Assembly (NCBI RefSeq): GCF_006345805.1
Contig: NC_043021.1
Location: 2,542,001 to 2,606,000, forward strand
DNA: 64,000 nt
Direction of reading: 5' to 3'
Source of the DNA: Octopus sinensis
Lineage: Eukaryota
In this document: one piece after another, positions 12,746 through 58,569 of the stretch
How positions within the stretch are numbered: the first letter of the stretch is position 1
How the letters are laid out: each line of letters opens with the position of its first letter
Notes under the pieces: generated by a model
Told to the model about the DNA's origin: nothing
Seen by the model: the letters and a program-made list of their open reading frames with translations, nothing else
Database searches by the model: none
Program-made: the position numbers and the translations under genes

Positions 12746-14207
12746 ATATAATATATAGATAATAATACATATATAATATATACACACACCACACATTTAT
12801 ATACATATATATACACACACATATATATACATATATACATATATATATATATTTACATATATATACATATATATATATATTTATACATACATACATACAC
12901 ACATCTATATACGTTCATAATACATACATACATACATACATACATGGACAGATACAAACAGACAGCAGGCAGACAGACAGTCAGATAGATAGATAGAGAA
13001 TGGGCCAAAAGTCACGAACCAAAACTTTTGGCATTTTATGTTGTTGTTGTTACTGCTGCTGTTGTTGTTATTCACGTTTGATATTCATGTACGTGTGTAT
13101 TCGACATCGATTTATTTCTTTAAGGCAAGCGAGCTGGCAGAAACGTTAGCACGCCGGGCGAAATGCTTAGCGTTATTTCTCGTTCCGAGTTCAAATTCCT
13201 CCCTCACCCACCCGGGTCGACTTTGCCTTTCTTTCATCCTTTCCGGAAGCGATAAATTTAGTACCAGTTGCGTACTGAGGTCGATTTAATCGACTGGGGG
13301 GAGCCCCCTTCCCCTACAAAATGTCGGGCCTTGTCCCTAAGAATAGAAAAGACTATTTTATTTCTTTTATTTGATGTTGGAAGTGGCTGTGTGGTAAGTA
13401 GCTTGTTTACCAACCACATGGTTCCGGGTTCAGTCCCACTGCGTGGCACCTTGGGCAAGTGTCTTCTGCTATAGCCCCGGGCCGACCAATGCCTTGTGAG
13501 TGGATTTGGTGGACGGAAACTGAAAGAAGCCTGTCGTATATATATATGTGTGTGTGTTTGTCCCCCTAGCATTGCTTGACAACCGATGCTGGTATGTTTA
13601 CTTCCCCGTAACTTAGCGGTTCGGCAAAAGAGAGACCGATAGAATAAGTACTGGGCTTACAAAGAATAAGTCCCGGGGTCGACTTGCTCGACTAAAGGCG
13701 GTGCTCCAGCATGGCCGCAGTCAAATGACTGAAACAAGTAAAAGAGTAAAAGAGTAATTTAGTTTGTGCGTGACCTTCGGCGGTGGCGACGTTTGTTGCC
13801 ATGGTGATGATGGCGGCGGTGGCGGCGGCGGCGGTGGTGGTGGTGGTGCGGGTGGCGGCAACAGGCTGCTGTCTTTCAAAAGTTCACATCGTCGACTGGA
13901 AATCCCCACTAAATAAATTCTTCTACTCGACAACTGCGTAACATTTTGAAGGCAAACTTCCTTTAGTGGACTAATCACACGCACACACATACACACTGAA
14001 AAATGCACACATACACAACACATACGCACATACACACACACACACTCACATTCAAACACACATACACACAAATACATATGTATACACACACACATACACA
14101 CAAATACGTACGCATACACACACACGAATACATATACATACGCACACACAAACATACACACACACACACGAATACACACACAAATACATATACATACGCA
14201 CACACAA

Positions 14208-14239
<32 letters not shown>

Positions 14240-14419
14240 GAATACACACACAAATACGTATACATACGCACACACAAGCATACACACACACACACACACG
14301 AATACACACACGAATACACACACAAATACATATACATACGCACACACAAACATACACACACACACAACACACACACACACGAATACACACACAAATACAT
14401 ATACATACGCACACACAAG

Positions 14420-14453
<34 letters not shown>

Positions 14454-14534
14454 TACATATACATACGCACACACAAACATACGCACACACACACACACAC
14501 ACACAATACACCTTACTATCTAAAACAGGCGTAA

Positions 14535-14779: not shown

Positions 14780-16590
14780 ACACCACCGCCCCACCACTCC
14801 AATACTACCGTCACCATCACCACCTTCGCCGCCGCCACCACCACCACCATCACCATTATCATCATCACCATCAACATCACTATCAATATTACGACAATCA
14901 CCACAATACCGCCACCACCACCACCATCATCATCATCAATATCACCACAATGACCACCATCACCATAATACCGTCGCCGCCGCCGCTACCACCATCACCA
15001 CAATACCACCACCACCACAACTACCAACATGACCAACACGACAACCACTATCACCACCACCACCACCACCACCGCCACCACCACCACCACCATAACCACC
15101 ACCACCACCATAACCACCACCACCACCACCGTCACCACCATAACCACCACCACCACCACCACCGCCACCACCACCACCACTACAACCACCACCGCCACCA
15201 CCATAACCACCACCACCACCACCACTACAACCACCAACACCACCACCACCACCACCGCCACCACCATAACCACAACCACCACCACCACCGCCACCACCAC
15301 CACCACCGCCACCACCACCGCCACCACCACCACCACCACCATAACCACCACCACCACCACCACTACAACCCCACCACCACCACCACCACCGCCACCACCA
15401 TAACCACCACCACCACCACCGCCGCCACCACCACCACCACGCCACCACCACCACCAACCACACCATAACCACCACCACCACCACCACTACAACCACCACC
15501 ACCCCACACCAACCGCCACCACCATAACCACCACCACCCACCACCACCACCGCCCACCACACCACCACCACCGCCACCACCACCACCACCGCCACCACCA
15601 CCACCACCATAACCACACCACCACCCCACCACCACCGTCACCACCATAACCACCACCACCACCACCATACCCCACCACCACCATAACCACCACCACCACC
15701 ACTACAACACCACCACCACCACCACCACCGCCGCCGCCACCACCATAACCACCACCACCACCACCGCCGCCACTACCACCACCACCGCCACCACCACCAT
15801 AACCACACACCGCCACCACCATAAACCACCACCACCACCACCACCGCCACCACACCACACCACTACAACCACCCACCACCACCACCACCGCCGCCGCCAC
15901 CACCATAACCACCACCACCACCACCGCCGCCATACCACCCACCACCGCCACCACCACCATAACCACCACCACCCCCACCGCCACCACCATAACCACCACC
16001 ACCGTCACCACCGCCACCACCACCACCCACCACCGCACCACCACCACCACTACAACCACCACCACCGCCACCACCATAACCACCACCACCACCACCACTA
16101 CAACCACCACCACCACCACCACCACCACCACCGCCACTACCATAACCACCACCACAACCACCACTACCACCACTACAACCACCACCACCACCACCACCAC
16201 CACCACACCACCGCCACCACCATAACCACCACCACTACCACAACCACCACCACCACTACAACCACCACCACCACCACCACTACCACCACCACCGCCACCA
16301 CCATAACCACCACCACCACCACCACTACAACCACCACCACCACCACCACCACCAATGCCACCACCATAACCACCACCACCACCACCACCGCCACCACCAC
16401 CATCACCACCACCACCACCACCACCACCACCACCACCACCACCACCACCACCACCACCACCACCACCACCACCACAACCACCACCACCACCACCACCACC
16501 ACCCCACCACCGCCGCCGCCACCACCATAACACCACCACCACCACCACCAACACCACCACCACCACCATCACCACCACCACCACCACCAA
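14780..16590. repeat. Approximately 1.8-kb degenerate (ACC)n/(GGT)n triplet tract
   Basis: ACC runs interspersed with ATA, GCC and ACT/ACA variants; source of the poly-T/H/P/G/V/W ORFs. Confidence 0.95.
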
Positions 16591-18156
16591 TATATACAAA
16601 CATAACTGCACACGTCGCACACATAAATGTGTGAGTAGGTGTGTGTGTGAGTGAGTGAGTATGTGTGTGTGTATGTTTACTCTTTTACTCTTTTACTCTT
16701 TTACTTGTTTCAGTCATTTGACTGCGGCCATGCTGGAGCACCGCCTTTAGTCGAGCAAATCGACCCCGGGACTTATTCTTTGTAAGCCCAGTACTTGTTC
16801 TATCGGTCTCTCTTTTGCCGAACCGCTAAGTGACGGCGACGTAAACACACCAGCATCGGTTGTCAAGCAATGCTAGGGGGACAAACACAGACACACAGAC
16901 ACACAAACATACACACAAATACATATATACGACAGGCTTTTTTCAGTTTCCGTCTACCAAATCCACTCACAAGGCATTGGTCGGCCCGGGGCTATAGCAG
17001 AAGACACTTGCCCAAGATGCCACACAGTGGGACTGAACCCGGAACCATGTGGTTGGTTAGCAAGCTACTTACCACACAGCCACCCTGTTTGAATATATAT
17101 ATATATATATAATAATCGAAATCGATAAAAAAATGAAATCGAAATCGAACAAAAATCAATGGAAATTGCAGTTGTGATTACCAGTGCCGGTGGCACATAA
17201 AAAGCACTGTACGATCGTGGCCGTTGCCAAACTCGGCTGGCACCTGTGCCGGTGGCACGTAAAAAGCACCCACTACACTCACGCAAATATACCACAAGGA
17301 AACAATGAAATTATTTTGGTTTCTATTATTGGTATAAATTTGTTTGAAATGGTTTATCCTTTATGTTGGAAATCTATAGGGTCGTCTGCTTCATTGATCG
17401 ATTAAATGGAGCCGCTTGAAACGGCCGTAATGTACTGATACCTGGACATTTTTCTTATTTGTTTACATTATATATATACATGCTTACATGGTACTCGAGT
17501 GTATATCTATATGTGTGCGCGTAAATGTTATGATTTTCCAAGAGGAGTGATAGTGACTTCGAAGTCACTGTTGCCCTCACAAAAACATACAGATAATACA
17601 GACGTTTGAAATAATCTCTTCATTATTTATTTATTCTTTTACTTGTGTCAGTCACTTGACTGCAGCCATGCTGGAGCAGCACCTTTAGTCAAACAAATCG
17701 ACCCCAGGATTTATCCTTTGTAAGCTTAGTACTTATTCTATCGGTCTCTTTTGCCGAACCACTAATTTACGGGGATGTAAACACACCAACATCGGTTGTC
17801 AAGCGATGGTGCGGGGACAAATCTACTCACAAGGCTTTGGCTGCCTCGAGGCTATAGTAGAAGACACTTGCCGAAGGTGCCACGCAGTGGGACTGAACCC
17901 GGAACCAAATAGTTGGTAAGCAAGCTACTTACCACACAGCCACTCTTGCGTCTTGAAGTAGCACCAGCAGGCTAAAGATAACAGTCAAAATAACTCAAAA
18001 CCATAGTTTTCACTTGAACACAAGGGCGAAATCGAAAGAACGGGTAGCAACTGAAAACTGTGGTTTTGAGGTATTTTGACTGCTATCTTTAGCATGATTG
18101 TTAGTAATTGATAATTTAGCCTTTATAGTTCTTTTACGCATGTTAACCACTGATAT

Positions 18157-18256
18157 NNNNNNNNNNNNNNNNNNNNNNNNNNNNNNNNNNNNNNNNNNNN
18201 NNNNNNNNNNNNNNNNNNNNNNNNNNNNNNNNNNNNNNNNNNNNNNNNNNNNNNNN
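18157..18256. other. Assembly gap (100 N)
   Basis: Run of exactly 100 N; true length unknown. Confidence 1.
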
Positions 18257-18310
18257 TGCCATATTAGCTTGCCGATAACTATTATTACCTAGTACTGCTG
18301 CCGTAGTCTC

Positions 18311-19048: not shown

Positions 19049-19435
19049 GTAGACCTTTCCGTCGATTTCCGTAAAAAAATTTTTTTTTTTTACATATGGG
19101 CTTGCGGAAACTTTTGAAGTAATGAGAGCGAAAGAGACCAAAAGAAAGCGATTGTATGACGAGGGAAGTTCTTTTGAAGTTACCGTGCATGGCAAGCATT
19201 GATGTACATGTGTGTGTGTGTGTGTGTGTTCGATGGGGTGTGGGAGACAGAAAGTATGTTGTGTAAGTGAAGTGCTTCTGTTAGTGTGTGTGAAGAGACA
19301 GAGTAATGTGTGAAAGAGAGAGATAACTGAAATTTCGCTCTCATTACTTCAAAAGTTCCCGCAAGCCCATATGTAAAAAAAAAAAAAGTTTTTACGGAAA
19401 TCGACGGAAAGGTCTACTAGGGACGAAAGATCGCC
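19049..19435. mobile_element. Long-TIR MITE, copy 1 (MULE-like), 9-bp TSD
   Basis: GCGAAGTCG at 19040-19048 and 19436-19444; TIR gtagacctttccgtcgatttccgta...gaagtaat; left tip lacks about 18 bp. Confidence 0.7.
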
Positions 19436-20234
19436 GCGAAGTCGAGTATCGGGCGCACGCATATAGCTAAACCATTTGTCTTGTTTTGCATTAAAATTAC
19501 ATCTTCCCTTTCATTTTTTACCAATTTAGCCCTTTACTTAGTCAAAGCAAAGCATTTTCACAAGTTTGTCCTAGACGTTCATGCTTCTTTACAGATTTTC
19601 TGTTGGCCCTTGTAGTATACGTTTTTGAGCAATATAAAACTTTCCTTTCACAAGTTCCAAGTTGCTCTGATGCTTGAAAATTTGGAATGCGTTTCACGAT
19701 GCATAAACAACAGAGAAATATATCCTATAGGCGCAGGAGTGGCTGTGTGGTAAGTAGCTTGCTAACCAACCACATGGTTCCGGGTTCAGTCCTACTGCGT
19801 GGCATCTTGGGCAAGTGTCTTCTGCTATAGCCCCGGGCCGACCAATGCCTTGTGGGTGGATTTGGAAACTGAAAGAAGCCTGTCGTGTATATATATAATT
19901 GTGTGTGTATATGTTTGTGTGTGTCTGTGTTTGTCCCCCTAGCATTGCTTGACAACCGATGCTGGTGTGTTTACGTCCCCGTCACTTAGCGGTTCGGCAA
20001 AAGAGACCGATAGAATGAGTACTGGGCTTACAAAGAATAAGTCCGGGGTCGATTTGCTCGACTAAAGGCGGTGCTCCAGCATGGGCGCAGTCAAATGACT
20101 GAAACAAGTAAAAGAGAGTAAAGAGTGTGAATATATGTGCACTGTGATACACAGGACTAATGAAGGTTGAGACAATAAGGGTGCGATTTAAGGTTAAATG
20201 TGTCTGCTATCTTTATCTCGTTGGTAAACAACTA

Positions 20235-20750
20235 CCATAAATCCTCAAGTATAGTCTGCCCTTGAGTATAATACGCAGGGGATTTTTAGGGGGCTGTACC
20301 TCTGAAAAATTTAAACCTGTGTATAATACGCACCCCTTCTCTAAATTGAGTCAAGGAGGTCTATATAACGTCCTTGGTTGTTTGTAAAAATGTATACGGA
20401 AACTCCTTTATTATTGTATATATAATAACATAATGCAAACGTGTAGCTTTTTTGTGCATTTTGTTTGCAGAAAATAAGAAAGAAATAACAGTAATAACGT
20501 TTAATAAATGTTGCTTACTGCAAGTTATGGATGAGCCTTTTATGACTTCATTGCTTTCAGGCTTAGCTTAAGTTATTTTCACGCCCGACATCACAAAATG
20601 CGTCTGAATAAACATTGCCAGACAGCAAATAGAGACTCGGACATGGTTTAGAAAATAATTTTCATTTTTAACCTCGTATATAGTATGCACTATGGATTTT
20701 GACCTTTAAATTTTGGGGGGGAAATGCGGATTATACTCAAGGATTTACGG
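20235..20750. mobile_element. pogo/Tigger-like (Tc1-mariner) MITE
   Basis: TA|CCATAAATCCTCAAGTATAGTCTGC ... TGCGGATTATACTCAAGGATTTACGG|TA; imperfect TIR of about 25 bp with TA flanks. Confidence 0.7.
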
Positions 20751-21072
20751 TATATATAAAAAAAAGTCTCCTTAGCTTCAGGTAAACTGGTTGACGTGCA
20801 TTTTACGGGCGTAAAAATATGAAATTTTTCTGAGAATAATCCTTTTTTTTTTATTAAAGGTACAAGGCCTGAATTTGGTGGGGTGGGGCTACTTAATTAA
20901 ATTGACCCAGTACTTAAGATGCCATAAGGATAAAAGGCAAAGTCGACCTCGACAACATCTGAACTCAAATTATACCGCTACGTATTTTGTCTGGCGCGTT
21001 AACGATTCTTCCTCCTCGCCGCCTAAAACTAAATTTTAAGAGAAACCGTATATGACAGTGACATCCTGTAAT

Positions 21073-21307
21073 TTCATGGAAATAATGTGACGTAACCACT
21101 GAATAAGTACCCTGGCGGCTGCTTCTGAAGTACTTACCCCATTACGAGAATGTACTAACCCATTACGAGAATGTACCTAACCCATTACGAGAATGTACTA
21201 ATAGTTATTTTTGTTCGTGGACGTGGCATAAGCGAGTTCTTTTAACAAAAGTTTTAAAATGTCATTGTTGTCGATTCTAGTTTTTATTGCAAATTACTTT
21301 CACTTTT
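21073..21307. promoter_or_regulatory. Candidate IRF promoter/enhancer: GAS (TTCATGGAA), CRE-like TGACGTAA, 3x GAS-like TTCTCGTAA repeat, IRF-E AAAAGTGAAAGT
   Basis: Motifs read directly at 21073-21081, 21088-21095, 21142/21163/21185 and 21296-21307, 0.86-1.1 kb upstream of the IRF ATG. Function is inferred. Confidence 0.45.
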
Positions 21308-21596
21308 TTAGGACAGTTTACTTACACCTTTTTTTTTTTTTTTTTACCGTAAACTGTATTTAAACCACGAAACTTTTATCGTGTATTTTATTTTTGACGT
21401 GGCCATTCCTACAGGTGCTATGAATTTTTCAAGATTATTTCTATTAACCGAGAAACTAAACTTTACATGTCATCGAATTCCGGAAAAAAAAATTCATAGC
21501 AGTAATTAAATGGAACGATCGGTTTATTGATTTATTTAATCAATCGACTAGTCCCCACACCACAAATTGCCGGCCTTGTGTCTACAGCAGAAAGGA

Positions 21597-21807
21597 GTAC
21601 TACTACTACTACTACTACTACTACAACAACTACTACTACTGTTGCTATTATTATTATTATTGTTATTATTATTGTTATTATTATTATTATATTATATTAT
21701 TATTATTATATTATTATTTATTATTATTATTTATTATTATTATTATTATTATTTATTATTATTATATTATGATTATTATTTATTATTATTATTTATTATT
21801 ATTATTA

Positions 21808-21842
<35 letters not shown>

Positions 21843-21885
21843 TATTATTATTATTATTATTTATTATTATATTATTATTATTAAG
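21597..21885. repeat. (ACT)n/(ATT)n microsatellite in the presumed first IRF intron
   Basis: Read directly. Confidence 0.95.
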
Positions 21886-22167
21886 GGTAGTGTTCTGGCA
21901 AAATCGTTACCTTGCCATACAAAAGATCTGAACAGCTTTCTTTGATCCATTTTCATGTTCTAAAGTTCAAATGCTGCCAAGGTGGATTTTTCCCTTTATC
22001 ATTCAACCTTTTGGTCAGTAAAATAAATACCGGTCAAGCAGGGGGTGGGCAATGTAATCGACTTACAACACCCCACCCCACCCACCAACCCGCCGTCACC
22101 AAATTTCATTGTTGAAACATTTAATTTTATTTCTATTTTTTAAATTTATTTTTTTTATAAATTCAGA

Positions 22168-22372
22168 ATGCCCAATTACAAAAGAAGAAAACCAATGATG
22201 AAGATCCGAATGAGAGATTGGTTGACCAATTTATTAGACAGCAAAAGTATTCCAGGCCTTGAGTGGCTAGACAAGAATAAACAGATATTCCGGATTCCTT
22301 GGAAGCATGGATCTCGTCAGACCTGGAAAGTAGACGATGCTGATTTGTTCGTGAGGTGGGCAGAACATGGAG
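22168..22372 (+). CDS. IRF: Interferon regulatory factor (IRF1/2-like), first coding exon, N-terminal part of DNA-binding domain
   Basis: MPNYKRRKPMMKIRMRDWLTNLLDSKSIPGLEWLDKNKQIFRIPWKHGSRQTWKVDDADLFVRWAEHG contains all five IRF tryptophans and the PWKH motif. Acceptor attcag|A at 22166/22167 just before the ATG; donor GAG|gtgagt at 22372/22373 (phase 1). Confidence 0.95.
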
Positions 22373-22404
22373 GTGAGTTGTTTTGTCTTCGATGCCCCCT
22401 CTCT

Positions 22405-22795
22405 TTCTATCTTTTACTTGTTTCAGTCATTTGACTGCGGCCATGCTGGAGCACCGCCTTTTAGTCGAGCAAATCGACCCCGGGACTTATTCTTTGTAAG
22501 CCCAGTACTTATTCTATCGGTCTGTTTTGCCGAACCGCTAAGTGACGGAGACGTAAACACACCAGCATCGGTTGTCAAGCAATGCTAGGGGGACAAACAC
22601 AGACACACAAACACATACACACACATACATATATACGACAGGCTTCTTTCAGTTTCCGTCTACCAAATCCACTCACAAGGCATTGGTCGGCCCGGGGCTA
22701 TAGCAGAAGACACTTGCCCAAGATGCCATGCAGTGGGACTGAACTCGGAACCATGTGGTTGGTTAGCAAGCTAATTACCACACAGCCACTCCTGC
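22405..22795 (-). mobile_element. SINE type A, antisense copy in the IRF intron between the DBD exons
   Basis: Reverse complement of the 23123-23518 copy, highly similar by eye. Confidence 0.9.
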
Positions 22796-23749: not shown

Positions 23750-23905
23750 GTAAATACAACCAAACGCTAGGGAACCCAAACACAAAAAGGTACAAAGCCA
23801 CTTTCCGGTGTGCACTAAACAGTTTACCAGACTGTGAAGAGCTGAAAAAAGAAAGTAGAAAAAGTGGTTTAAATGCTTTCAAAGTTTACCAATTCAAAGA
23901 CGAGT
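23750..23905 (+). CDS. IRF: IRF second coding exon, recognition helix of the DNA-binding domain
   Basis: (G)KYNQTLGNPNTKRYKATFRCALNSLPDCEELKKESRKSGLNAFKVYQFKDE matches IRF1/2 WKANFRCAMNSLPD. Acceptor ttttcag|GT continues phase 1; donor GAGT|gtgagt (phase 1). Confidence 0.93.
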
Positions 23906-28813: not shown

Positions 28814-31357
28814 ACCTATTTCTTTACTACCCACAAGGGGCTAAACACAGAGAGGATAAAGAAGGACAGACAAACGGATTAGGTCGATTATATCGACCCC
28901 AGCGCATAACTGGTACTTACTTAATTGACCCCGAAAGGATGAAAGGCAAAGTCGGCTTTAATTTGAACTCAGAACATAGCGGCAGATGAAATACCTATTT
29001 CTTTACTACCCACATGGGGTTAAACACAAAGAGGACAAACAAGGACAGAAAAACGGATTAAGTCGATTATATCGACCCCAGCACATAGCTGGTACTTACT
29101 TAATTGACCCCGAAAGGATGAAAGGCAAAGTCGGCTTTAATTTGAACTCAGAACATAGCGGCAGATGAAATACCTATTTCTTTACTACCCACATGGGGTT
29201 AAACACAAAGAGGACAAACAAGGACAGAAAAACGGATTAAGTCGATTATATCGACCCCAGCACATAGCTGGTACTTACTTAATTGACCCCGAAAGGATGA
29301 AAGGCAAAGTCGGCTTTAATTTGAACTCAGAACATAGCGGCAGATGAAATACCTATTTCTTTACTACCCACATGGGGTTAAACACAGAGAGGACAAACAA
29401 GGACAGAAAAACGGATTAAGTCGATATATCGACCCCAGCACATAGCTGGTACTTACTTAATTGACCCCGAAAGGATGAAAGGCAAAGTCGGCTTTAATTG
29501 AACTCAGAACATAGCGGCAGATGAAATACCTATTTCTTTACTACCACATGGGGTTAAACCAAAGAGGACAAACAAGGACAGAAAAACGGATTAAGTCGAT
29601 TATATCGACCCCAGCACATAGCTGGTACTTACTTAATTGACCCCGAAAGGATGAAAGGCAAAGTCGGCTTTAATTTGAACTCAGAACATAGCGGCAGATG
29701 AAATACCTATTTCTTTACTACCCACATGGGGTTAAACACAAAGAGGACAAACAAGGACAGAAAAACGGATTAAGTCGATTATATCGACCCCAGCACATAG
29801 CTGGTACTTACTTAATTGACCCCGAAGGATGAAAGGCAAAGTCGCTTTAATTTGAACTCAGAACATAGCGGCAGATGAAATACTATTTCTTTCTTTACTA
29901 CCCACATGGGGTAAACACAGAGAGGACAAACAAGGACAGAAAAACGGATTAAGTCGATTATATCGACCCCAGCACATAGCTGGTACTTACTTAATTGACC
30001 CCGAAAGGATGAAAGGCAAAGTCGGCTTTAATTGAACTCAGAACATAGCGGCAGATGAAATACCTATTTCTTTACTACCCACATGGGGTTAAACACAGAG
30101 AGGACAACAAGGACAGACAAACGGATTAAGTCGATTATATCGACCCCAGCACATAGCTGGTACTTACTTAATCGACCCCGAAAGGATGTAAGGCAAGTCG
30201 GCTTTAATTTGAACTCAGAACATAGCGGCAGATGAATACCTATTTCTTTACTACCCACATGGGGTTAAACACAGAGAGGACAAACAAGGACAGACAAACG
30301 GATTAAGTCGATTATATCGACCCCAGCACATAGCTGGTACTTACTTAATCGACCCCGAAAGGATGTAAGGCAAAGTCGGCTTTAATTTGAACTCAGAACA
30401 TAGCGGCAGATGAAATACCTATTTCTTTACTACCCACATGGGGTTAAACACAGAGAGGACAAACAAGGACAGACAAACGGATTAAGTCGATTATATCGAC
30501 CCCAGCACATAGCTGGTACTTACTTAATCGACCCCGAAAGGATGTAAGGCAAAGTCGGCTTTAATTTGAACTCAGAACATAGCGGCAGATGAAATACCTA
30601 TTTCTTTACTACCCACATGGGGTTAAACACAGAGAGGACAAACAAGGACAGACAAACGGATTAAGTCGATTATATCGACCCCAGCACATAGCTGGTACTT
30701 ACTTAATTGACCCCGAAAGGATGAAAGGCAAAGTTGGCTTTAATTTGAACTCAGAACATAGCGGCAGATGAAATACCTATTTCTTTACTACCCACATGGG
30801 GTTAAACACAGAGAGGACAAACAAGGACAGACAAACGGATTAAGTCGATTATATCGACCCCAGCACATAGCTGGTACTTACTTAATCGACCCCGAAAGGA
30901 TGCAAGGCAAAGTCGGCTTTAATTTGAACTCAGAACATAGCGGCAGATGAAATACCTATTTCTTTACTACCCACATGGGGTTAAACACAGAGAGGACAAA
31001 CAAGGACAGACAAACGGATTAAGTCGATTATATCGACCCCAGCACATAGCTGGTACTTACTTAATTGACCCCGAAAGGATGAAAGGCAAAGTCGGCTTTA
31101 ATTTGAACTCAGAACATAGCGGCAGATGAAATACCTATTTCTTTACTACCCACATGGGGTTAAACACAGAGAGGACAAACAAGGACAGACAAACGGATTA
31201 AGTCGATTATATCGACCCCAGCACATAGCTGGTACTTACTTAATCGACCCCGAAAGGATGTAAGGCAAAGTCGACCTCAATTTGAAGTCAGAACGTAGCG
31301 GCAGACGAAATACCGCTACGCATTTCGCCTGGCGTGCTAACGTTTCTGCCATCTCGC
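28814..31357 (-). repeat. Tandem array of 14 x about 179-bp units derived from SINE type B, inside an IRF intron
   Basis: Unit starts at about 28814, 28986, 29165, 29344, 29521, 29698, 29876, 30055, 30231, 30410, 30589, 30768, 30947 and 31126; only the last unit continues into the SINE head. Confidence 0.95.
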
Positions 31358-40049: not shown

Positions 40050-43000
40050 CCAAAAGAAAACGAACGAAAAATGATCTAGGGAAGATAATAATATCATGGC
40101 ATATATTTCCCCACAGATAAATCTAACACTGTACAAACATACTTAAACTGGAGACAGAACCACCCTGAAGTAAGACCCTACACAGACAGTAACAAACTTG
40201 CCAATGTCAGAAGAAACATTATGAAAAAAAAATTACTGACTGAAGTAGAGATTGACCAAATTAAACAAGCAGTAAAGAATGAAGCTGTAGCTAAATAATC
40301 TACTACAGAGGAAATAATTATAGACCAGATCAGGGCTGATGAAAACGCAGTAAGGATTAAAAGAGTTAGTGTAATTTTTTTTTTTTTGAAATACTCTCTG
40401 AACCAACCATAAACCCTGAGGCAGATGAAAATCAAATAGATGAAGAAAGTCACACAGAAATTGACCCAACAGAATTACATGATCTAAAAAATCCAATCGT
40501 GACTGAATGGCTGAAAATTAAAGAAACCAGTATGAATGAAAGTGATACTCTCCCCAAAAGTTTGCAATTCTAACCAAAACCTGAAAATAATTGGTAAAAT
40601 CCGCCTTGCACTTACAGATATAATTTCAGATAATAATGTTGATATTACAGATCTCAGTTACCTGTACTATGCATCCATGAAAATCTCAACGATTCGTGAA
40701 ATCATGAAAAGATTAGAAGACGACAACATTCCCACAAAAGCCTTCTTGGCAAAAGCGTATTCAACACCTAATTCAGCTCCTTATGTTTGACATAGAATGT
40801 TTGAAAAACCTTAAGTTTGGCAAGACTACCAAACCTACAAAAACCCAAAAATTAAAGAAAAAATATATGAAAACCATACTTGACATTGATGCCACCATAG
40901 AAACCATCAAGCAAAAGGTTATGTCCTAAAGCTGCTTGCATAGCAAGGTATGAAATGCGCGTTAGATTCTTCAAGGATAACATGTTCAAAAATAACCCCA
41001 AAAATTTTCCGGCCACCACAAACAGTTATAGAAGGAGCCTTTCTTATTCTTCAACATAATGACGGACGCCATCATATCATCGATGCCTTTTCTCTACCGT
41101 CATCACCATCGTCGTCTTAGAACTTCACGTCGTCATCTTCGTCGCCATCACCACTAAGAACAATGTTGTCTCAAGTCCACTACAGTCGCCTTTCCACCGC
41201 CACCGTCGACCAAGATGTACATAGCAACTCGCGGAACTTTAGCTTTCACGCTGTTCGTGCATAGCGCGCCAAGGATTAACAGCCCAGTCTATCTGCGAGA
41301 TTCTTCTGTAACGATTTAACCTGTCACAGCATCGAAGCTACAACTGCTACACATTGTGTTCAACCGGCATCTGCATTTGTGATTTCAACATTCTGTTACA
41401 GAACGAACTGCTATTGTGCATCAGGCTATTAGAGACTGGTAAATTAACTCCATATTCCCAGCAGCATATTCCCTAATGAACAGAAAGGATGTAAACGTGG
41501 ATCCTACGGCTGTAAAGACCAACTACTCATCAATAAGATGATCTTAGAAGATTATCACAAACGACACAAAAACTTATCAATAGCCTGGATAGACTATAAA
41601 AAGGCTTTTGATAGCCTACCACATAGCTGGATTAGGAAATGCCTGGAAATGTATAAGATAGCACCTACTCTGCGAAACTTCTTGACTGTAAGTATGAGAT
41701 CATGGAGAACCACACTGACTTTGAACAGTGACAATGAATCTCTAAATGCTAGAGATGTAAAAATTTCATGTGGCATTTTCCAGAGTGACTCACTATCACC
41801 ACTCCTCTTTTGTCTAGCCTTAATACCTCTCTCAAAATTGCTCAATGATGCACAGTACGGATATAAAATGTTTGATAAAAATATAAATCATCTCATTTAC
41901 ATGGATGATTTAAAGCTCTTTGCAAAAAATGACCAACAACTCAAGGGCTTACTAACGATTGTTAAATAATTCAGTGATGACATCAAGATGCAATTTGGCC
42001 TTGATAAATGTGCAAAAGCTACCTTTGTCAAAGGAAAAATGACGGAAACCTTGACCAGCAGAGCGTCATAAAAGAGTTAGGCAGAGAGCTACAAATACCT
42101 ATGGGTACTTGAAGGGGACAGAATCGGGTATTCAGTGATGAGGGAAAGGATCAGAAGAGAATGTTATCGCAGGGTGAGAGCAATACTCAAGACAGAGCTG
42201 AATGCGAGAAACAGGATCGAAGCGATCATGACTTACAGTTTCAATATCGTTAACTGGTCAAAATATTGAAATATGTAATCTTGACAGAAAAATACAAAAA
42301 TGGTTAACAATGCATAGAATGCACCACCCTAAGGCAGATATAGAACGACTTTATCTGCCAAGAAAAGAGGGAGGCCGTGGACTTTTGCAACTGGCAATAA
42401 CAATGAAGATTGCTACAATTGGCCTAGACACCTACCTGAAAAACTCTGAGGACTGGATGTTAAAACTTGTCTCAAAACATGAAAACAAGAAAGCATCATA
42501 CTCAGTAACAAAACAGGCAAAGGAATATCTAAGTGAATTCCGAATACAACAAATTTCGGAATTAGAGATAGACATACAAGAAACAAGCACAGAAAAAGCT
42601 AGGCGCATGAAAACTCGTGCCAAAACTGCGGCCTTAGATATTCTGACTGATAAATGGCAAGAAAAACCTCTCAATGGCAAATACCCAAAGAGAGTGAATA
42701 ATGCTGATGTTGAGGAAGCCCTGACCCATCAATGGCTAATGGCTTCTGGCTTAACATCTGAAACAGAAGGGTTTATCATAGCAGCCCAAGATCAATGCCT
42801 TCCTACAAGGAACTACCAGGCCGACATATTAAAGAACGGCAGTAGCCCAACATGTCGTGTATGTCAACAACAAAATGAAACCATTGATCATGTTGTCTCC
42901 AAGTGCAGTCTTCTTGCGCCTACAGAGTATCTCAACAGGCATGAAAGAGCTGCACAATATACTCGCTGGATAATTTGCAAAAGCTTGGACTTGCCCCATG

Positions 43001-43050
43001 ATAAAAACTGGTGGGAACACAAACCACCTCCAGCACTTGAAAATGATCAC
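40050..43050 (+). mobile_element. Degraded Dong/R4-type (RLE clade) non-LTR retrotransposon, copy 1; interrupted at about 41020-41450, 3' end missing
   Basis: RT motifs [19 protein letters not shown](S)[15 protein letters not shown]; later CRVC...ETIDHVVSKC zinc knuckle; several stops and frameshifts. Confidence 0.85.
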
Positions 43051-46010
43051 CAAATTCGAAAAGAAAATCAAACTGGAGGAGTAGAATTGAAACTGAGATT
43101 GAATCATTGCGAAGGGAGGTATCAATATTAACTGAGCTGTTTGCTGGAAATGGTGTAAGATCAAGAAAAGGTAGGAAGATTGTGAGAAAATATGGATTCT
43201 CAACAAGAGAAGAACTAATGTCAGCGAAAGAAACACTTAAACAAAATGTTCAAGCAAAAGCTCAGAAAATACGCAGATTTGAGAAAAGAATCAAATGCTA
43301 CAAGCAAAATAAGATGTTCAAATCCGACGCCAAATCATTTTACAGGGAAATAGGGAAGGAAAAAAATAACCATTGAAAATCCACCCCTAATGGAAGAAGT
43401 TGAAGACTTTTGGAAGGGGATCTGGAGTGATCAGAAACCATACAATGAAAATGCAGACTGGATCAAACGCACCCAAGATGCCTACAAAAATCTACAAGAA
43501 CAGGTATGGGAAGACATCTCAATCGCCGACCTAAGGAGGGCACTAACGAAGGCTCATAAGTGGAAATCCCCTGGTATTGATAGAGAACCAAATTTCTGGC
43601 TCTCATCCCTCTTGTCCGCACACAAAATCTTAGTAACACTATTTAATAGTATTATGAAAGACCCGGAAAAAACTCCCCATTGGATGGCAAATGGTATGTA
43701 TTACTTACCTCCTCCCCAAAAATAACAAAACGAAAGACCCCAAAAACTACCGGCCTATAACATGTTTGTCTACTACCTATAAGATTTTGACATCTATTCT
43801 AGTAGAGAAAACATATACGCTTATGGAAGAGAATAACCTCTTTCCCACTGAACAAAAAGGATGCAGACGAGGCTCATACGGATGCAAAGATCAGCTCCTA
43901 ATTAATCGCATGATCCTTGAGAACTGCCATAACAAGCGCAGAAATCTCAGGTCTTCATGGATTGATTATAAAAAAGCCTTTGACAGCATACCACATTCGT
44001 GGATTCTGAAATCGCTGGACATTTTCAAAATTTCCCCTGTGATTTCAGATTTTTTAAAGTATAATATGTCACTATGGAACACGAAGCTCCAATTATGCCA
44101 TTCTAATGGAGTATTGTGCTCAAACAATATTAGTATAAACTGTGGCATTTTCCAAGGTGACTCACTTTCACCACTAATTTTCTGCATAGCACTAATACCA
44201 CTCTCAAGTGAACTGAATAGAACAGGGTATGGCTACAAAATTGACAACAGGAAAATAAGCCATCTATTTTATATGGATGATTTAAAACTATATGGCAAAG
44301 ATGATGAAGAGCTTCAAGGACAACTACATACTGTGAAAGGATTTAGTGATGATATCGGGATGGAGTTTGGCCTTGAAAAGTGTGCCAAAGCCACTTTTAA
44401 GAAAGGGAAATTGGTAAAGTCAAGTTCAATCGAATTAGATGTGGAAACAGTAATAAAGGAACTTGAGCAAGAACAAACCTATAAATACCTAGGAATAAAT
44501 GAAGGCTCTGGTATCCAGCATGCAAGCATGAAAGAGAAGTTTAGGAAGGAATGTTATAGAAGAGTTCGAGCAGTCCTGAAATCTGAGATGAATGCATATA
44601 ATAAGGTGTTAGCCATAAATTCCTTAGCAGTACCAGTTGTTCTATATAGCTTCAATAAGTTTAACTGGAATACCAGTGAAATAATGAAAATTGACAGAAA
44701 AATCCGCGAGCTACTGACTTGTAATAAGATGCACCTTCCAAAGGCAGACGGGGATCATTTTTACCTTCCCAGAGCTCAGGGAGGTCGAGGCTTGATCCAG
44801 CTTGAACTTAAGTACAAAACCACCACAATCAGACTGGCCAAATACCTTGAAACAACCAACGATTGGATGCTAAAACTTGTTGAAAAACATGAAAGACCGA
44901 AAAAACTTCACTCTATTCTGAAAGAGAGCAAAAAATTTGCTACTGATCTCTTAGATACCCAACAGATTGATCAGGTTGAAGGAAATGTGCCAACTGCTGC
45001 TGCAAAGAAAATAAAATTAATTGCAAAGATAAAAGCACATGAAAAATTAGCTAGCAGATGGGAACAGAAACCTCTCCATGACAAGTATGTGGCCCGTAGC
45101 AAAAAAGCTGATGTCAACCAGAAACACACACACCAACGGTTACGAAGCAAAAGGCTAAAAGCAGAGAGTGAAAGTTTCATATTAGCTGCTCAAGACCAAA
45201 GCTTATTAACCCGGAACTATCAAGCCAATGTGATAAAAAAATGGAGCTGACCCAAAATGCCGATTCTGTAACGATGAGATTGAAACAATAGACCACCTAA
45301 TCTCAGGGCGTAGAGTCTTAACACCTGTAGAATATAAAGCAAGACATGACAGAGTTGGCCAGTATTTACACTGGACAATATGTCGGCATTATAAAATCAA
45401 AACCACTGACAAATGGTATAAACACCATCCTGAAGCTGTGACTGAGGGAGAAAATGTGTCGATTCTATGGGACTTCCCCGTACAGGCCGACAAGACTATA
45501 AAAGCTAATAAACCGGATATTATTATAAAAGATCATACAAAAAAGATGTGTTTATTAATTGATATAAGTATTCCTTGCGATCACAATATAGCGGAGAAAG
45601 AATTTGACAAGATTAGTAAATATAAAGACCTGCTAATAGAATTTGAAAAAATGTGGCATCTCAAGGCAACTACAGTACCAGTGATTGTGGGATCTCTGGG
45701 AATGATAAAAAAAGGTACTGAAACCTATTTGAAAATGATACCAGGCTTGCCATCCCTACAGGAAGTACAAAAAATCGTGTTAACTGGAACGGCTCATGTA
45801 CTGAGAAGAGCATTATCGCTGTGAAAACAACATCCATTCATGAATTTATTTGTTTATTAATTTTTTAAAATCCATATTTTACCTGTGAATTTGCGTGTGT
45901 AATCTGGGAATGCATGCAATGAGCTTCTATGCCCTAGGTGTTCGGAAAACATTCGGCGAGAAATGGAAGAAAATTTGAAGAAAGAAGGAAAAAATAAAAT
46001 TAATAATGAT
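43050..46010 (+). mobile_element. Dong/R4-type RLE LINE, copy 2 (different subfamily, 5'-truncated, 3' end present)
   Basis: [52 protein letters not shown]...IDHL, then RLE KPDIII...LIDIS...EKEFDKISKY ending at 45824, followed by a 3' UTR with an AAT-rich tail. At least three frameshifts. Confidence 0.9.
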
Positions 46011-56960: not shown

Positions 56961-57180
56961 CCCTTTCGTTACTGTATTTATTTTGAGATGTTCTGTGTTT
57001 CTTTCAATTATTTTAAATATAATAAAGAATTTAGGAAAATAACTTAGTTATTGTTAACCTAGTGTTAGGAATGTAGATTGTCACTAAGGTTTGGTGGAAG
57101 ATTTTAATTCAAAACTTATGAAAACAAGACATTTTACCACAGAGCCAGAGCCGGTTTTGGCCGGGTTAGTAACAAAAGGG
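56961..57180. mobile_element. piggyBac-like MITE
   Basis: TTAA|CCCTTTCGTTACT...AGTAACAAAAGGG|TTAA; 13-bp TIR with one mismatch; TTAA on both sides. Confidence 0.85.
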
Positions 57181-57232
57181 TTAAGCACACAGCTGTTGTC
57201 TCCAAATCTGTAAAATAAAATTAATAACTCAC

Positions 57233-58151: not shown

Positions 58152-58569
58152 CGATAGCTGCAAAGGAAAAAACAAGAATCTATACATAAAAATGAATATT
58201 GAACACATACATCATCATCATCACCATCACTTAATGCCTATGGTCTATGCTGGAATGGGTTGGATGGAGCAAAGGGCTCCAATGGGTCCAAGGACTGCAC
58301 CCTGTTTTAATGTCTGCTTTGGCATGGTTTCTATGACTGGGGACCCTTCCTAATGTCAACCACTTCACAGCATGCACTGGGTACTTTTTTGTGCCACCAG
58401 CACAAAAAAATAATATTAAAATAAAGAAAATCAAAATAATAAATAAAGAAATAAATAAATGAAAACAAAAGGTAAAATAAAGTAGAAAAATGTAAAAAAA
58501 AATTTATTTTTGAAAATTTTGTAGTTGTTTTGAAGTGTCCTAATGTATTATTAAGGATAGGTTTTGGCA

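What the first reader, a model, noticed from the sequence alone, without database searches (positions are those of the whole stretch)
21073..21414. Vertebrate-IRF1-like STAT/IRF motif cluster upstream of an invertebrate IRF gene
Seen within 235 bp: a perfect GAS TTCATGGAA in an extended palindrome (ATTTC-ATG-GAAAT, 21071-21083); TGACGTAA; three tandem 21/22-bp repeats each carrying TTCTCGTAA on the minus strand; and AAAAGTGAAAGT (minus strand, 21296-21307). TTCTCGTAA fits TTCN3TAA and is one base from the m67 SIE TTCCCGTAA; the copies are spaced two helical turns apart. AAAAGTGAAAGT matches the IRF-1/IRF-2 IRF-E consensus. A plausible donor CAG|gtgcta at 21414/21415 would pair with the acceptor at 22166 to give a non-coding first exon. 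Established: mammalian IRF1 is GAS-induced, IRF2 carries an IRF-E, and molluscs have STAT and IRF genes but no recognised interferon. Inference: this is a JAK-STAT-driven, self-regulated antiviral promoter, possibly with STAT sites amplified by a small tandem duplication. A single GAS is common by chance; the clustering is the argument.
Basis: partly seen in the sequence, partly recalled or inferred. Interest (0 to 1): 0.7.

Follow-up and report, generated by a model that had tools for sequence, protein, structure and literature searches.

The report
Likely promoter of an invertebrate IRF gene
A short stretch just upstream of an invertebrate interferon-regulatory-factor gene carries the same set and order of STAT, bZIP and IRF binding motifs seen at IRF1/2-type genes in humans and sea anemones, so it is probably that gene's promoter, but nobody has yet shown that it is transcribed from there or bound by those factors.

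Summary
Taken singly, each occurs in the 64-kb window at chance frequency. The cluster is unusual only under strict motif definitions.

Three things raise it above a motif coincidence:
- The segment 21025-21563 has no other copy in the window. It is not CpG-depleted and lies directly 5' of the first coding exon of an intact IRF1/2-type DNA-binding domain.
- The GAS has the same extended arms as the published human IRF1 STAT1 site (ATTTC-N3-GAAAT) and, like it, a nearby TGACG. This composite appeared in none of 100 shuffles.
- The order GAS, IRF site, TATA, ATG recurs at the Nematostella IRF locus. It is also phylogenetically footprinted in four orthologous IRF1/2-like loci of an unidentified, probably cnidarian, clade.

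The proposed donor at 21414 scores poorly, and GT sites that good occur about 7 per kb. It also sits in a hairpin stem. The "intron" is almost entirely SINE and microsatellite insertions. The 21-bp minisatellite is ordinary for this locus, and its motif is not a canonical GAS.

No cephalopod orthologue or transcript was reachable. The TSS, motif conservation within cephalopods and factor binding remain untested.

Verdict: a plausible new member of a known promoter type.

The parts
20850..21024 (-). SINE copy bounding the window-unique segment on the left
   Evidence: Self-BLAST finds 8 other copies. Local alignment to window SINE copies covers 20850-21007.
21071..21083 (.). GAS-type STAT palindrome ATTTC-ATG-GAAAT (core TTCATGGAA at 21073-21081)
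   Evidence: It is the only ATTTCNNNGAAAT in 64 kb, against 0.13 expected. The arms match the human IRF1 STAT1 site GATTTCCCCGAAATGACGG (PMC3532225) and Nematostella ATTTCTTGGAAAT.
21087..21096 (+). bZIP site GTGACGTAAC (CRE-like TGACGTAA at 21088-21095), starting 4 nt after the palindrome
   Evidence: TGACGTMA occurs twice in the window. The composite with the palindrome occurred in 0 of 100 shuffles. The fit to the E4BP4/NFIL3 consensus RT(G/T)AYGTAAY is from my own knowledge.
21130..21201 (-). 3.3 copies of a 21/22-bp minisatellite. Each copy carries TTCTCGTAA (m67-like, non-palindromic) and TAATGG.
   Evidence: TRF and the repeat finder family D3. The 16-mer CATTACGAGAATGTAC is invariant in the three copies. 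TAATGG occurs three times. TTCYCGTAA is found 3 times against 0.72 expected, but as one duplication event.
21220..21227 (+). GACGTGGC (ACGT-core box), first copy
   Evidence: Three matches in the window against 0.66 expected, two of them in this segment. An ACGTGG box is invariant next to the TATA box in L019-L022.
21296..21307 (-). IRF-E AAAAGTGAAAGT
   Evidence: It is the only AAASYGAAASY match in 64 kb. It is 11/12 identical to Nematostella AAAACTGAAAGT. It contains AAGTGA and GTGAAA, the IRF1 recognition units named in PMC7819612.
21329..21345 (+). T17 tract between the IRF-E and the TATA-like box
   Evidence: TRF.
21357..21364 (+). TATA-like TATTTAAA, a candidate core promoter 61 bp downstream of the IRF-E
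   Evidence: 6 matches in 64 kb on both strands. Inr-like TTATTTT at 21388 and CCATTCC at 21403. Weak on its own.
21395..21403 (+). TGACGTGGC (UPRE/ATF6/XBP1-like), second GACGTGGC copy
21412..21420 (+). Judged weak.
   Evidence: Shapiro-Senapathy score 51.9 against 93.8 for the true donor. It ranks 20th of 238 GT sites. 13.8% of GT sites score at least as well, or 7.3 per kb.
21416..21501 (+). Perfect 14-bp inverted repeat (TGCTATGAATTTTT / AAAAATTCATAGCA). The hairpin would sequester the proposed donor.
   Evidence: the repeat finder pair I4. RNA fold -18 kcal/mol, z = -2.3.
21542..22081 (+). Inserted repeat block: SINE 3' fragment (21542-21602, possibly from about 21443), (TAC)n(TAT)n microsatellite (21598-21883), and a second SINE (21896-22081)
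22167..22372 (+). First coding exon of the IRF1/2-type gene (ATG at 22168, acceptor AG at 22165-22166, donor GAG|GTGAGT at 22372)
   Evidence: Pfam PF00605, E = 4e-35. Closest solved structures are IRF2 at 2.9e-35 and IRF1 at 3.3e-31.
23750..23905 (+). Second coding exon, completing the DNA-binding domain (approximate 3' end)
   Evidence: tblastn and the acceptor sequence read.

Best explanation
The segment from about 21027 to 21440 is the proximal 5' regulatory region, most likely the promoter, of an IRF1/2-type transcription-factor gene.

Reading 5' to 3' it holds:
- a high-affinity-type STAT palindrome (ATTTC-ATG-GAAAT);
- a bZIP site (GTGACGTAAC) starting 4 nt after it;
- a lineage-specific 21-bp minisatellite;
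- an ACGT-core box;
- an IRF-E (AAAAGTGAAAGT);
- a T17 tract;
- a TATA-like box;
- a second ACGT-core box.

Inferred mechanism: an activated STAT dimer binds the palindrome, probably together with a CREB/ATF/PAR-type bZIP factor on the adjacent site. IRF proteins, including the gene's own product, bind the IRF-E about 60 bp upstream of the core promoter and give auto- or cross-regulation.

This grammar is not a vertebrate peculiarity. It recurs at IRF1/2-type genes in a sea anemone and in a second invertebrate clade.

The stretch between this promoter and the ATG exon was later filled by a SINE fragment, a (TAC)n(TAT)n microsatellite and another SINE. With these removed, the TATA-like box lies about 170-270 bp from the ATG, as in the comparators. 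So the present 'intron' is either a young intron or part of an inflated 5' UTR.

The minisatellite is most likely a neutral expansion. Whether it adds weak STAT sites is open.

Shown: sequence, placement, comparators. Inferred: transcription start, factor binding, inducibility.
For: Gene identity:
- The downstream exons encode an intact IRF domain (PF00605, E = 4e-35). It is closest to IRF2 and IRF1 and keeps the five Trp and the RCALNS helix.

Placement:
- 21025-21563 has no other copy in the window and is flanked by SINEs.
- CpG o/e is 1.1-1.8 across 20.6-21.5 kb. The window median is 0.58 and the 95th percentile 1.32. The value falls to 0.4-0.8 from 21.9 kb on, through the gene body.

Element quality:
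- ATTTCNNNGAAAT is found once against 0.13 expected.
- With TGACG within 10 nt it occurred in 0 of 100 shuffles and 0 times in 4 Mb of Markov sequence.
- The human IRF1 STAT1 site is printed as GATTTCCCCGAAATGACGGCA (PMC3532225).
- The IRF-E is the only AAASYGAAASY match in 64 kb.

Independent replicate, using patterns fixed before I looked. At the Nematostella IRF locus L002:
- The only ATTTCNNNGAAAT in 19.3 kb (0.07 expected) lies 447 bp upstream of the ATG.
- A strict IRF-E, GAAAACTGAAAGT, lies 349 bp upstream (0.35 expected per locus).
- TATATAAAA lies 253 bp upstream.
- By my arithmetic, the chance of both motifs falling within 1 kb upstream is about 6e-5.

Phylogenetic footprint. Four syntenic orthologues, L019-L022, have DNA-binding domains 66-83% identical to each other. 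Background three-way identity upstream is 0.1-0.25. Conserved blocks reach 0.5-0.8 and hold:
- TGATGTCA (three of the four loci);
- GAS TTCCCGGAA, about 370 bp upstream of the ATG;
- NF-kB GGGAAATCCC, about 340 bp upstream;
- ISRE GAAATTGAAA, about 245 bp upstream (L022: AAGTGAAAATAGAAAGT);
- a TATA-like box, about 220 bp upstream;
- ACGTGG.

Distances:
- In the window, GAS, IRF-E and TATA-like box lie 1097, 872 and 811 bp upstream of the ATG.
- Removing the repeat block (540-639 bp) gives about 458-557, 233-332 and 172-271 bp.
- That is the range seen in Nematostella (447, 349, 253) and L019 (370, 241, 218).

Biological plausibility:
- Oyster IRF1 binds ISRE and is induced by immune challenge (PMC13524488).
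- Poly(I:C)-induced Nematostella genes, IRFs among them, are enriched for STAT, IRF and NF-kB motifs (PMC8476169).
Against: - No transcript, CAGE, chromatin or binding data exist here, and no cephalopod orthologue could be reached. Neither the TSS nor within-clade conservation is known.
- Each motif alone is at chance frequency. With a broad motif library, 2-9% of all 240-bp windows look as rich.
- No usable donor lies between the cluster and the ATG exon. The proposed one sits in a hairpin stem.
- A second CpG-undepleted, non-repeat patch at 18.5-19.05 kb has two CGCCAT (one within a YY1-like GCCATGTT) and a GAAAACGAA IRF-like motif. It could be the real promoter.
- No NF-kB site is present, unlike vertebrate IRF1 and L019-L022.
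- Several comparators fail the strict patterns. Exaiptasia and L019-L021 lack TTTCNNNGAAA. The lenient IRF pattern AANNGAAAGT is not enriched upstream.
- The relaxed TTTCNNNGAAA tally was defined after I had seen some comparators.
- In Nematostella, single knock-downs of STAT or of each IRF (only 40-60% for the IRFs) did not measurably change cGAMP-induced expression (PMC8713801).
Confidence: 0.5

Rival explanations
1. Chance motif matches in non-functional DNA. The segment is ordinary upstream or intronic sequence, and the real promoter lies elsewhere: at 18.5-19.05 kb, beyond the assembly gap at about 18.14-18.26 kb, or just upstream of the ATG.
For: - Each motif is at chance frequency in the window.
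- 9% of 240-bp windows hold at least 3 motif classes from a 20-motif library.
- The donor is weak and of a commonplace quality.
- Minisatellites are frequent here.
- 18.5-19.05 kb is also CpG-undepleted and carries YY1-like and IRF-like motifs.
Against: - The strict cluster is expected at most 0.007 times per 64 kb, and the GAS + TGACG composite was absent from all shuffles.
- It lies exactly at the 5' flank of an IRF1/2-type gene.
- The same elements in the same order occur at the Nematostella locus, using patterns fixed beforehand, and are footprinted in L019-L022.
- 18.26-19.05 kb has no donor scoring 58 or more either.
Confidence: 0.25
2. The segment is a real regulatory region, but one read by other factors. 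It would be a bZIP-driven promoter or enhancer (CREB/ATF, PAR/NFIL3, ATF6/XBP1-type), possibly with homeodomain factors on the repeats. The GAS-like palindrome would be incidental, so the gene is not JAK-STAT-driven.
For: - There are four ACGT-core elements in 320 bp: TGACGTAA at 21088, GACGTGGC at 21220 and 21396, and TGACGTGG at 21395. GACGTGGC is found 3 times against 0.66 expected.
- ACGTGG is invariant next to the TATA box in L019-L022.
- Each repeat unit holds TAATGG.
- nvSTAT knock-down had no measurable effect on cGAMP-induced genes in Nematostella.
Against: - The palindrome has the extended arms typical of strong STAT sites such as m67 and human IRF1.
- A canonical TTCCCGGAA is footprinted at the orthologous position in the comparator clade.
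- bZIP and STAT sites sit side by side in human IRF1 as well. The two readings are therefore not exclusive.
Confidence: 0.15
3. One reading: the 21/22-bp minisatellite is an adaptive amplification of low-affinity STAT sites (TTCTCGTAA) that lets STAT oligomers bind cooperatively.
For: - TTCTCGTAA is one base from the m67 core.
- Tandem GAS sites are bound cooperatively by STAT1 tetramers (PMC4284922).
- The 16-mer around the motif is invariant in all three copies, and every difference falls in the other 5-6 bases.
- The related 9-mer TTCTCGGAA occurs upstream of the Nematostella and Exaiptasia IRF genes.
Against: - The copies are one duplication event.
- The window holds more than 15 minisatellite arrays.
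- The motif is not palindromic and lacks the ATTTC/GAAAT arms.
- The published tandem probe has a 10-bp spacer (19 bp start to start). Here the spacer is 12-13 bp (21-22 bp start to start).
- By my arithmetic, three changes all missing a 9-bp motif in a 21-bp unit has probability about 0.19.
- The units also read as TAATGG sites.
Confidence: 0.12

Closest known systems
Human/mammalian IRF1 promoter (GAS plus NF-kB module; STAT1-inducible)
   Same: - It sits 5' of an IRF1/2-subfamily gene.
- It has a single perfect GAS with identical 5-bp arms: ATTTC-CCC-GAAAT in human, ATTTC-ATG-GAAAT here.
- A TGACG lies next to the GAS (PMC3532225; PMC7819612).
   Different: - The spacer triplet differs.
- TGACG overlaps the GAS in human but starts 4 nt after it here, where it forms a full TGACGTAA.
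- No NF-kB consensus was found.
- An IRF-E and a TATA-like box are present.
- Inducibility and STAT binding are untested.
- About 0.5-0.6 kb of SINE and microsatellite now separates it from the ATG exon.
IRF-E-bearing, IRF-regulated promoters (IRF2 gene; IFN-beta PRDI)
   Same: - AAAAGTGAAAGT fits G(A)AAA(G/C)(T/C)GAAA(G/C)(T/C).
- It contains the AAGTGA and GTGAAA units recognised by IRF1 (PMC7819612).
- The gene's own DNA-binding domain keeps the DNA-contact residues.
   Different: - That the IRF2 promoter carries an IRF-E is from my own knowledge. No paper in the library held both search terms.
- Only one IRF-E is present here.
- Binding has not been tested.
Nematostella vectensis IRF locus (P0001, GCA_000209225.1 DS470101.1; locus L002)
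   Same: - The order is the same: ATTTCTTGGAAAT 447 bp, GAAAACTGAAAGT 349 bp and TATATAAAA 253 bp upstream of the ATG.
- The IRF-E is 11/12 identical.
- The palindrome arms are identical.
   Different: - No bZIP site lies next to the GAS.
- A second GAS (ATTTCTCGGAAAA) lies 821 bp upstream of the ATG.
- There is no minisatellite and no repeat insertions.
- Its function is also untested.
Footprinted promoter of an IRF1/2-like gene in an unidentified, probably cnidarian, clade (L019-L023)
   Same: Conserved blocks run in the order bZIP-like TGATGTCA, GAS, IRF site, TATA-like box, ACGTGG, all within 400 bp of the ATG.
   Different: - The GAS is the canonical TTCCCGGAA, without ATTTC/GAAAT arms.
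- The bZIP site lies upstream of the GAS.
- A conserved NF-kB site is present.
- The IRF site is of the GAAANNGAAA type.
Tandem GAS elements bound by STAT tetramers
   Same: Repeated STAT-like half-palindromes about two helical turns apart.
   Different: - The published 2xGAS probe has perfect GAS sites with a 10-bp spacer.
- Here the sites are imperfect TTCN3TAA with 12-13-bp spacers.
- They arose by recent minisatellite expansion.

Membership tests
STAT-inducible IRF1-type promoter | Lies at the 5' end of an IRF1/2-subfamily gene | tested here: met
   PF00605, E = 4e-35. Best solved-structure hits are IRF2 and IRF1. The cluster is 0.8-1.1 kb upstream of the ATG exon, with only repeats in between.
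STAT-inducible IRF1-type promoter | Palindromic GAS TTCN3GAA | tested here: met
   TTCATGGAA within ATTTCATGGAAAT. The arms are identical to the human IRF1 site.
STAT-inducible IRF1-type promoter | NF-kB site cooperating with the GAS | tested here: not met
   No GGGRNNYYCC in 21027-21420. It is present and conserved in L019-L022.
STAT-inducible IRF1-type promoter | Transcription starts nearby | not testable with these tools
   No transcript data. There are only a TATA-like TATTTAAA at 21357 and Inr-like matches, plus the CpG o/e step at about 21.5-21.9 kb.
STAT-inducible IRF1-type promoter | STAT binding and cytokine or virus inducibility | not testable with these tools
   Needs EMSA or ChIP, and reporter or qPCR assays.
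STAT-inducible IRF1-type promoter | Conservation in orthologues | tested here: inconclusive
   No cephalopod orthologue was reachable. Distant IRF1/2-type loci share the grammar, but not all fit the strict patterns.
IRF-E / ISRE-regulated (auto-regulated) promoter | Match to G(A)AAA(G/C)(T/C)GAAA(G/C)(T/C) | tested here: met
   AAAAGTGAAAGT is the sole AAASYGAAASY match in 64 kb.
IRF-E / ISRE-regulated (auto-regulated) promoter | The gene's product can recognise GAAA cores | tested here: met
   The five Trp and R88/C89/N92 of the recognition helix are invariant in A1 and A2. Actual binding was not tested.
cAMP-response element | Palindromic TGACGTCA | tested here: inconclusive
   TGACGTAA matches 7 of 8 positions. 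It is a CRE/PAR hybrid.
Tandem GAS for cooperative STAT binding | Two or more GAS sites at a tetramer-compatible spacing | tested here: inconclusive
   TTCTCGTAA occurs three times at 21-22 bp start to start. The sites are not palindromic. The published example has 19 bp start to start.
Non-coding first exon spliced to the ATG exon | Consensus-quality donor paired with the acceptor at 22166 | tested here: not met
   The donor scores 51.9 against 93.8 for the true donor. Sites this good occur 7.3 per kb. It lies in a hairpin stem. The acceptor itself is good.

The most novel reading that the evidence does not exclude
A STAT-to-IRF1/2 input combined with IRF self-regulation was already wired into the promoter of the ancestral IRF1/2 gene before cnidarians and bilaterians split, and before interferons existed. 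Its cis-elements have been kept in near-identical form in octopus, sea anemone and human: ATTTC-N3-GAAAT with a neighbouring bZIP half-site, and AAAA(G/C)TGAAAGT close to the TATA box. In the octopus lineage a minisatellite then multiplied a weak STAT site, giving a tunable, copy-number-dependent input.
Probability: 0.15. Interest if true: 0.7.

Novelty: new member of a known kind. Interest (0 to 1): 0.5.

Why it matters
If the cluster is a working promoter, a mollusc with no known interferon has its IRF1/2-type gene under the same STAT, bZIP and IRF control logic as mammalian IRF1.

Together with the sea-anemone and second-clade loci found here, that makes one question directly testable. Did the STAT-IRF feed-forward and feedback core of the interferon response predate interferons and vertebrates? 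The test needs only three short elements, in reporter and binding assays.

It also gives a concrete promoter for cephalopod immune studies. And it is an example of a 5' UTR or first intron built almost wholly from SINE and microsatellite insertions.

Tried and rejected
- **Cephalopod orthologues or transcripts.** The protein search with the DNA-binding domain found only Nematostella and one metagenome ORF. The exact-ORF look-up found nothing. The metagenome scan with the single protein found nothing. Cephalopod conservation could therefore not be tested.
- **Failed look-ups.** P0087 (Exaiptasia X2) and P0100 (Paramuricea) are not on record.
- **RNA families.** Rfam gave no match anywhere in the window.
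- **Repeat origin of the segment.** It is not a repeat copy within the window.
- **Partial duplication.** The short direct repeats D4 and D6 hinted at a duplication between the segment and the 85 bp before the ATG. The alignment score equals the shuffle mean, so I rejected this.
- **TIR-like pair.** The pair 20744-20765 / 21332-21353 is low-complexity and not significant.
- **Relaxed palindrome TTTCNNNGAAA.** It gives 4 hits in eight 1-kb upstream regions against 0.56 expected. That is a Poisson P of about 0.003 by my arithmetic. I defined this pattern after seeing some comparators, and Exaiptasia and L019-L021 do not meet it. I treat it as suggestive only.
- **Lenient IRF pattern AANNGAAAGT.** It is not enriched upstream: 2 hits against 1.06 expected.
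- **Porites L003.** The picture is ambiguous. TTTTCGGGGAAAA lies about 330 bp upstream of the ATG. IRF-E-like sites lie 587 and 843 bp upstream of the annotated gene start, inside the neighbouring IRF gene's 3' end.
- **L001/L006.** This intronless metagenome IRF ORF has nothing relevant upstream.
- **L008.** Its exon ends at the same point of the DNA-binding domain as the first coding exon here. It has an IRF-E about 440 bp upstream of the exon but no GAS, and its ATG exon could not be placed.
- **Alternative donors.** The best nearby are 20781 CAG|GTAAAC (71.6) and sites inside SINEs. None is convincing.
- **Bacterial promoter/terminator scanner.** Not used, because it does not apply to a eukaryotic locus.
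Full report
**Observation.**
- ATTTCATGGAAAT lies at 21071-21083, with the GAS TTCATGGAA at 21073-21081.
- TGACGTAA lies at 21088-21095.
- A 3.3-copy 21/22-bp tandem repeat spans 21130-21201. It carries TTCTCGTAA on the minus strand at 21142, 21163 and 21185.
- AAAAGTGAAAGT lies on the minus strand at 21296-21307.
- CAG|GTGCTA lies at 21414/21415, and an acceptor ...ttcag|aATG at 22166.
- TTCTCGTAA is one base from the m67 core, as printed in PMC4284922.

**What the gene is.**
- ORF 22168-22434 and a second exon at about 23750-23905 encode a complete IRF DNA-binding domain.
- Pfam PF00605 matches at E = 4e-35.
- The closest solved structures are IRF2 (2.9e-35) and IRF1 (3.3e-31), well ahead of IRF4, IRF3 and IRF7.
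- The five tryptophans and the FRCALNSLPD recognition helix are intact.
- The coding exon ends at a strong donor, GAG|GTGAGT at 22372.
- The ATG sits one base after a pyrimidine-rich acceptor, so an upstream non-coding exon or a long 5' UTR is expected.
- I could not confirm the organism with the tools. The abundant SINE copies look like octopus SINEs from memory only.

**Chance.**
- Individually the motifs are not enriched. Observed against expected per 64 kb: TTCNNNGAA 15 against 18-20, TGACGTMA 2 against about 2, AAASYGAAASY 1 against 0.8-0.9.
- The strict three-way cluster within 240 bp is expected 0-0.007 times per 64 kb.
With a 20-motif textbook library, 9% of 240-bp windows carry at least 3 classes. 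With a 10-motif immune subset it is 1.7%.
- The three TTCTCGTAA copies are one duplication event, and the window holds more than 15 minisatellite arrays.
- On generic motif counting, then, the cluster is only mildly unusual.

**Surroundings.**
- Self-BLAST shows 21025-21563 has no other copy in the window.
- It is bounded by SINE copies at about 20850-21024 (minus strand) and 21542-21602. A (TAC)n(TAT)n microsatellite follows at 21598-21883, then another SINE at 21896-22081.
- CpG observed/expected is 1.1-1.8 over 20.6-21.5 kb. The window median is 0.58 and the 95th percentile 1.32. It drops to 0.4-0.8 from 21.9 kb onward through the gene body.
- That is the pattern expected for an unmethylated 5' region next to a methylated gene body.
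- A second CpG-undepleted patch lies at 18.3-19.4 kb. Part of it (19049-19436) is a foldback repeat with a second copy at 61866-62272.
- The non-repeat part of that patch, 18.5-19.05 kb, carries YY1-like and IRF-like motifs. It remains an alternative promoter candidate.

**The proposed exon.**
- The donor at 21414 scores 51.9 on a Shapiro-Senapathy scale, using a matrix recalled from general knowledge. The true donor scores 93.8.
- 13.8% of GT sites, or 7.3 per kb, score at least as well.
- The site lies in the stem of a perfect 14-bp hairpin at 21416-21501.
- No good donor exists between the cluster and the ATG exon.
- Almost all of the putative intron is inserted repeat sequence. Removing 540-639 bp of it brings the TATA-like TATTTAAA at 21357 to about 170-270 bp from the ATG.

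**Resemblance to human IRF1.**
- PMC3532225 prints the human IRF1 STAT1 site as GATTTCCCCGAAATGACGGCA. That is ATTTC-N3-GAAAT with an overlapping TGACG.
- The window has ATTTC-ATG-GAAAT, then four bases, then TGACGTAA.
- ATTTCNNNGAAAT is expected 0.13 times per 64 kb.
- With TGACG within 10 nt it occurred in 0 of 100 shuffles and 0 times in 4 Mb of Markov sequence.
- PMC7819612 confirms that the IRF1 promoter has a single GAS and is also driven by NF-kB. It also confirms that IRF1 recognises AAGTGA/GTGAAA units.

**Comparators.**
- A profile search recovered 420 IRF domains, and I fetched eight loci with usable upstream sequence.
- *Nematostella (L002).* I used patterns fixed beforehand. The only ATTTCNNNGAAAT in 19.3 kb (0.07 expected) lies 447 bp upstream of the ATG. 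A strict IRF-E, GAAAACTGAAAGT (0.35 expected per locus), lies 349 bp upstream. It is 11/12 identical to the window's. TATATAAAA lies 253 bp upstream. By my arithmetic both motifs falling within 1 kb upstream has a chance of about 6e-5.
- *L019-L022.* These four loci are syntenic, with FKBP and EF-hand genes upstream; L019-L021 also show STT3 downstream. They come from ENA and Tara assemblies of unknown, probably cnidarian, origin. Their IRF1/2-like proteins are 66-83% identical to each other.
- Their upstream regions align at near-random identity except for discrete blocks: TGATGTCA (three of the four), GAS TTCCCGGAA, NF-kB GGGAAATCCC, an ISRE (GAAATTGAAA; in L022 AAGTGAAAATAGAAAGT), a TATA-like box, and ACGTGG. 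All lie within 400 bp of the ATG.
- *Exaiptasia.* Three plain GAS lie within 600 bp upstream, including the same 9-mer TTCATGGAA, plus GAAAAATAGAAAGT 183 bp upstream of the ATG.
- *Porites.* The picture is ambiguous.

**Limits of the comparison.**
- Not every strict pattern holds everywhere. TTTCNNNGAAA is absent from Exaiptasia and from upstream of L019-L021.
- AANNGAAAGT is not enriched upstream.
- Even so, the grammar of bZIP, GAS, IRF site, TATA and ATG recurs at IRF1/2-type genes. After the repeats are subtracted, the octopus distances fall in the same range as the comparators.

**Interpretation.**
- The best reading is that 21027-21440 is the proximal promoter or 5' regulatory region of this IRF1/2-type gene. 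Its STAT/bZIP composite and IRF-E are probably functional.
- I put this at about 0.5, because no transcript, chromatin, binding or cephalopod-conservation evidence could be obtained.
- The minisatellite-as-amplified-STAT-sites idea is possible but weak, at about 0.12. Its motif is non-palindromic. Its spacing (21-22 bp) differs from the published tandem-GAS example (19 bp). Each unit also reads as TAATGG.
- No NF-kB site is present.
- Functional caution comes from Nematostella. Partial single knock-downs of STAT or of each IRF did not measurably change cGAMP-induced expression (PMC8713801).

**Novelty.**
- STAT, IRF and NF-kB motif enrichment in promoters of poly(I:C)-induced cnidarian genes is already published (PMC8476169).
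- Oyster IRF1 binds ISRE (PMC13524488).
- An oyster interferon-like protein and receptor are reported (PMC8218723). The premise that molluscs have no recognised interferon therefore needs softening.
- I found no paper on a cephalopod IRF promoter.
- The finding is therefore a plausible new member of a known promoter kind. Its wider value is that it helps make the antiquity of STAT-to-IRF1/2 wiring testable.

Noticed in passing
L019:9600-9800, L020, L021 (same range), L022:4600-4800: Four syntenic IRF1/2-like loci from ENA/Tara assemblies of unidentified taxon share sharply footprinted upstream blocks: TGATGTCA, TTCCCGGAA, GGGAAATCCC, GAAATTGAAA, a TATA-like box, ACGTGG, and a TTTTCGAAA palindrome. 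This looks like a ready-made comparative dataset for IRF1/2 promoter evolution.
   Followed up: partly
window 19049-19436 and 61866-62272: A foldback (MITE-like) repeat with 85-bp terminal inverted repeats (96% identical) around a (TG)n core. The second copy is 86% identical. Both copies sit in CpG-undepleted patches.
   Followed up: partly
window 21416-21501: A perfect 14-bp inverted repeat with a 58-nt loop, immediately after the proposed donor. It may be a tiny MITE or a structured element. RNA fold z = -2.3.
   Followed up: partly
window 21220-21227 and 21396-21403: The 8-mer GACGTGGC occurs twice on the + strand within 180 bp (3 in 64 kb against 0.66 expected). The second copy forms the UPRE-like TGACGTGG. 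An ACGTGG box is also invariant beside the TATA box in L019-L022.
   Followed up: partly
window 14812-16589: A (CAC)n microsatellite of about 1.8 kb (roughly 600 copies), preceded by (CA)n at 13976-14505. These inflate the local CpG o/e and GC values.
   Followed up: no
window 28814-31314: A 179-bp unit repeated 14 times at 97% identity. The unit is SINE-like. The array lies downstream of the IRF DNA-binding-domain exons, probably in an intron.
   Followed up: no
window 41538-45824: ORFs of a non-LTR retrotransposon on the + strand. The 519-aa ORF matches RVT_1 at E = 7.6e-30.
   Followed up: partly
window 57084-58208 (minus strand): A 374-aa ORF with WD40 repeats (Prp19/THOC3-like beta-propeller hits). 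It is probably an exon of a neighbouring gene whose promoter may lie in the CpG-undepleted 61-63 kb patch.
   Followed up: partly
window ~18138-18257: A run of 100 N, an assembly gap 3 kb upstream of the cluster. Any promoter beyond it would be unseen or misplaced.
   Followed up: no
L001:2583-2954 and L006:2227-2508: A short ORF (123 aa in L001) holding the IRF DNA-binding domain uninterrupted, on metagenome scaffolds of unknown origin. Both have a TTTCNNNGAAA about 550-620 bp downstream of the ORF.
   Followed up: no
window 21598-21883: A (TAC)n(TAT)n microsatellite lies between the candidate promoter and the ATG exon. A polymorphic (CT)n in the shrimp IRF 5' UTR is reported to alter expression and virus resistance (PMC6915115), so length variation here might matter.
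   Followed up: no
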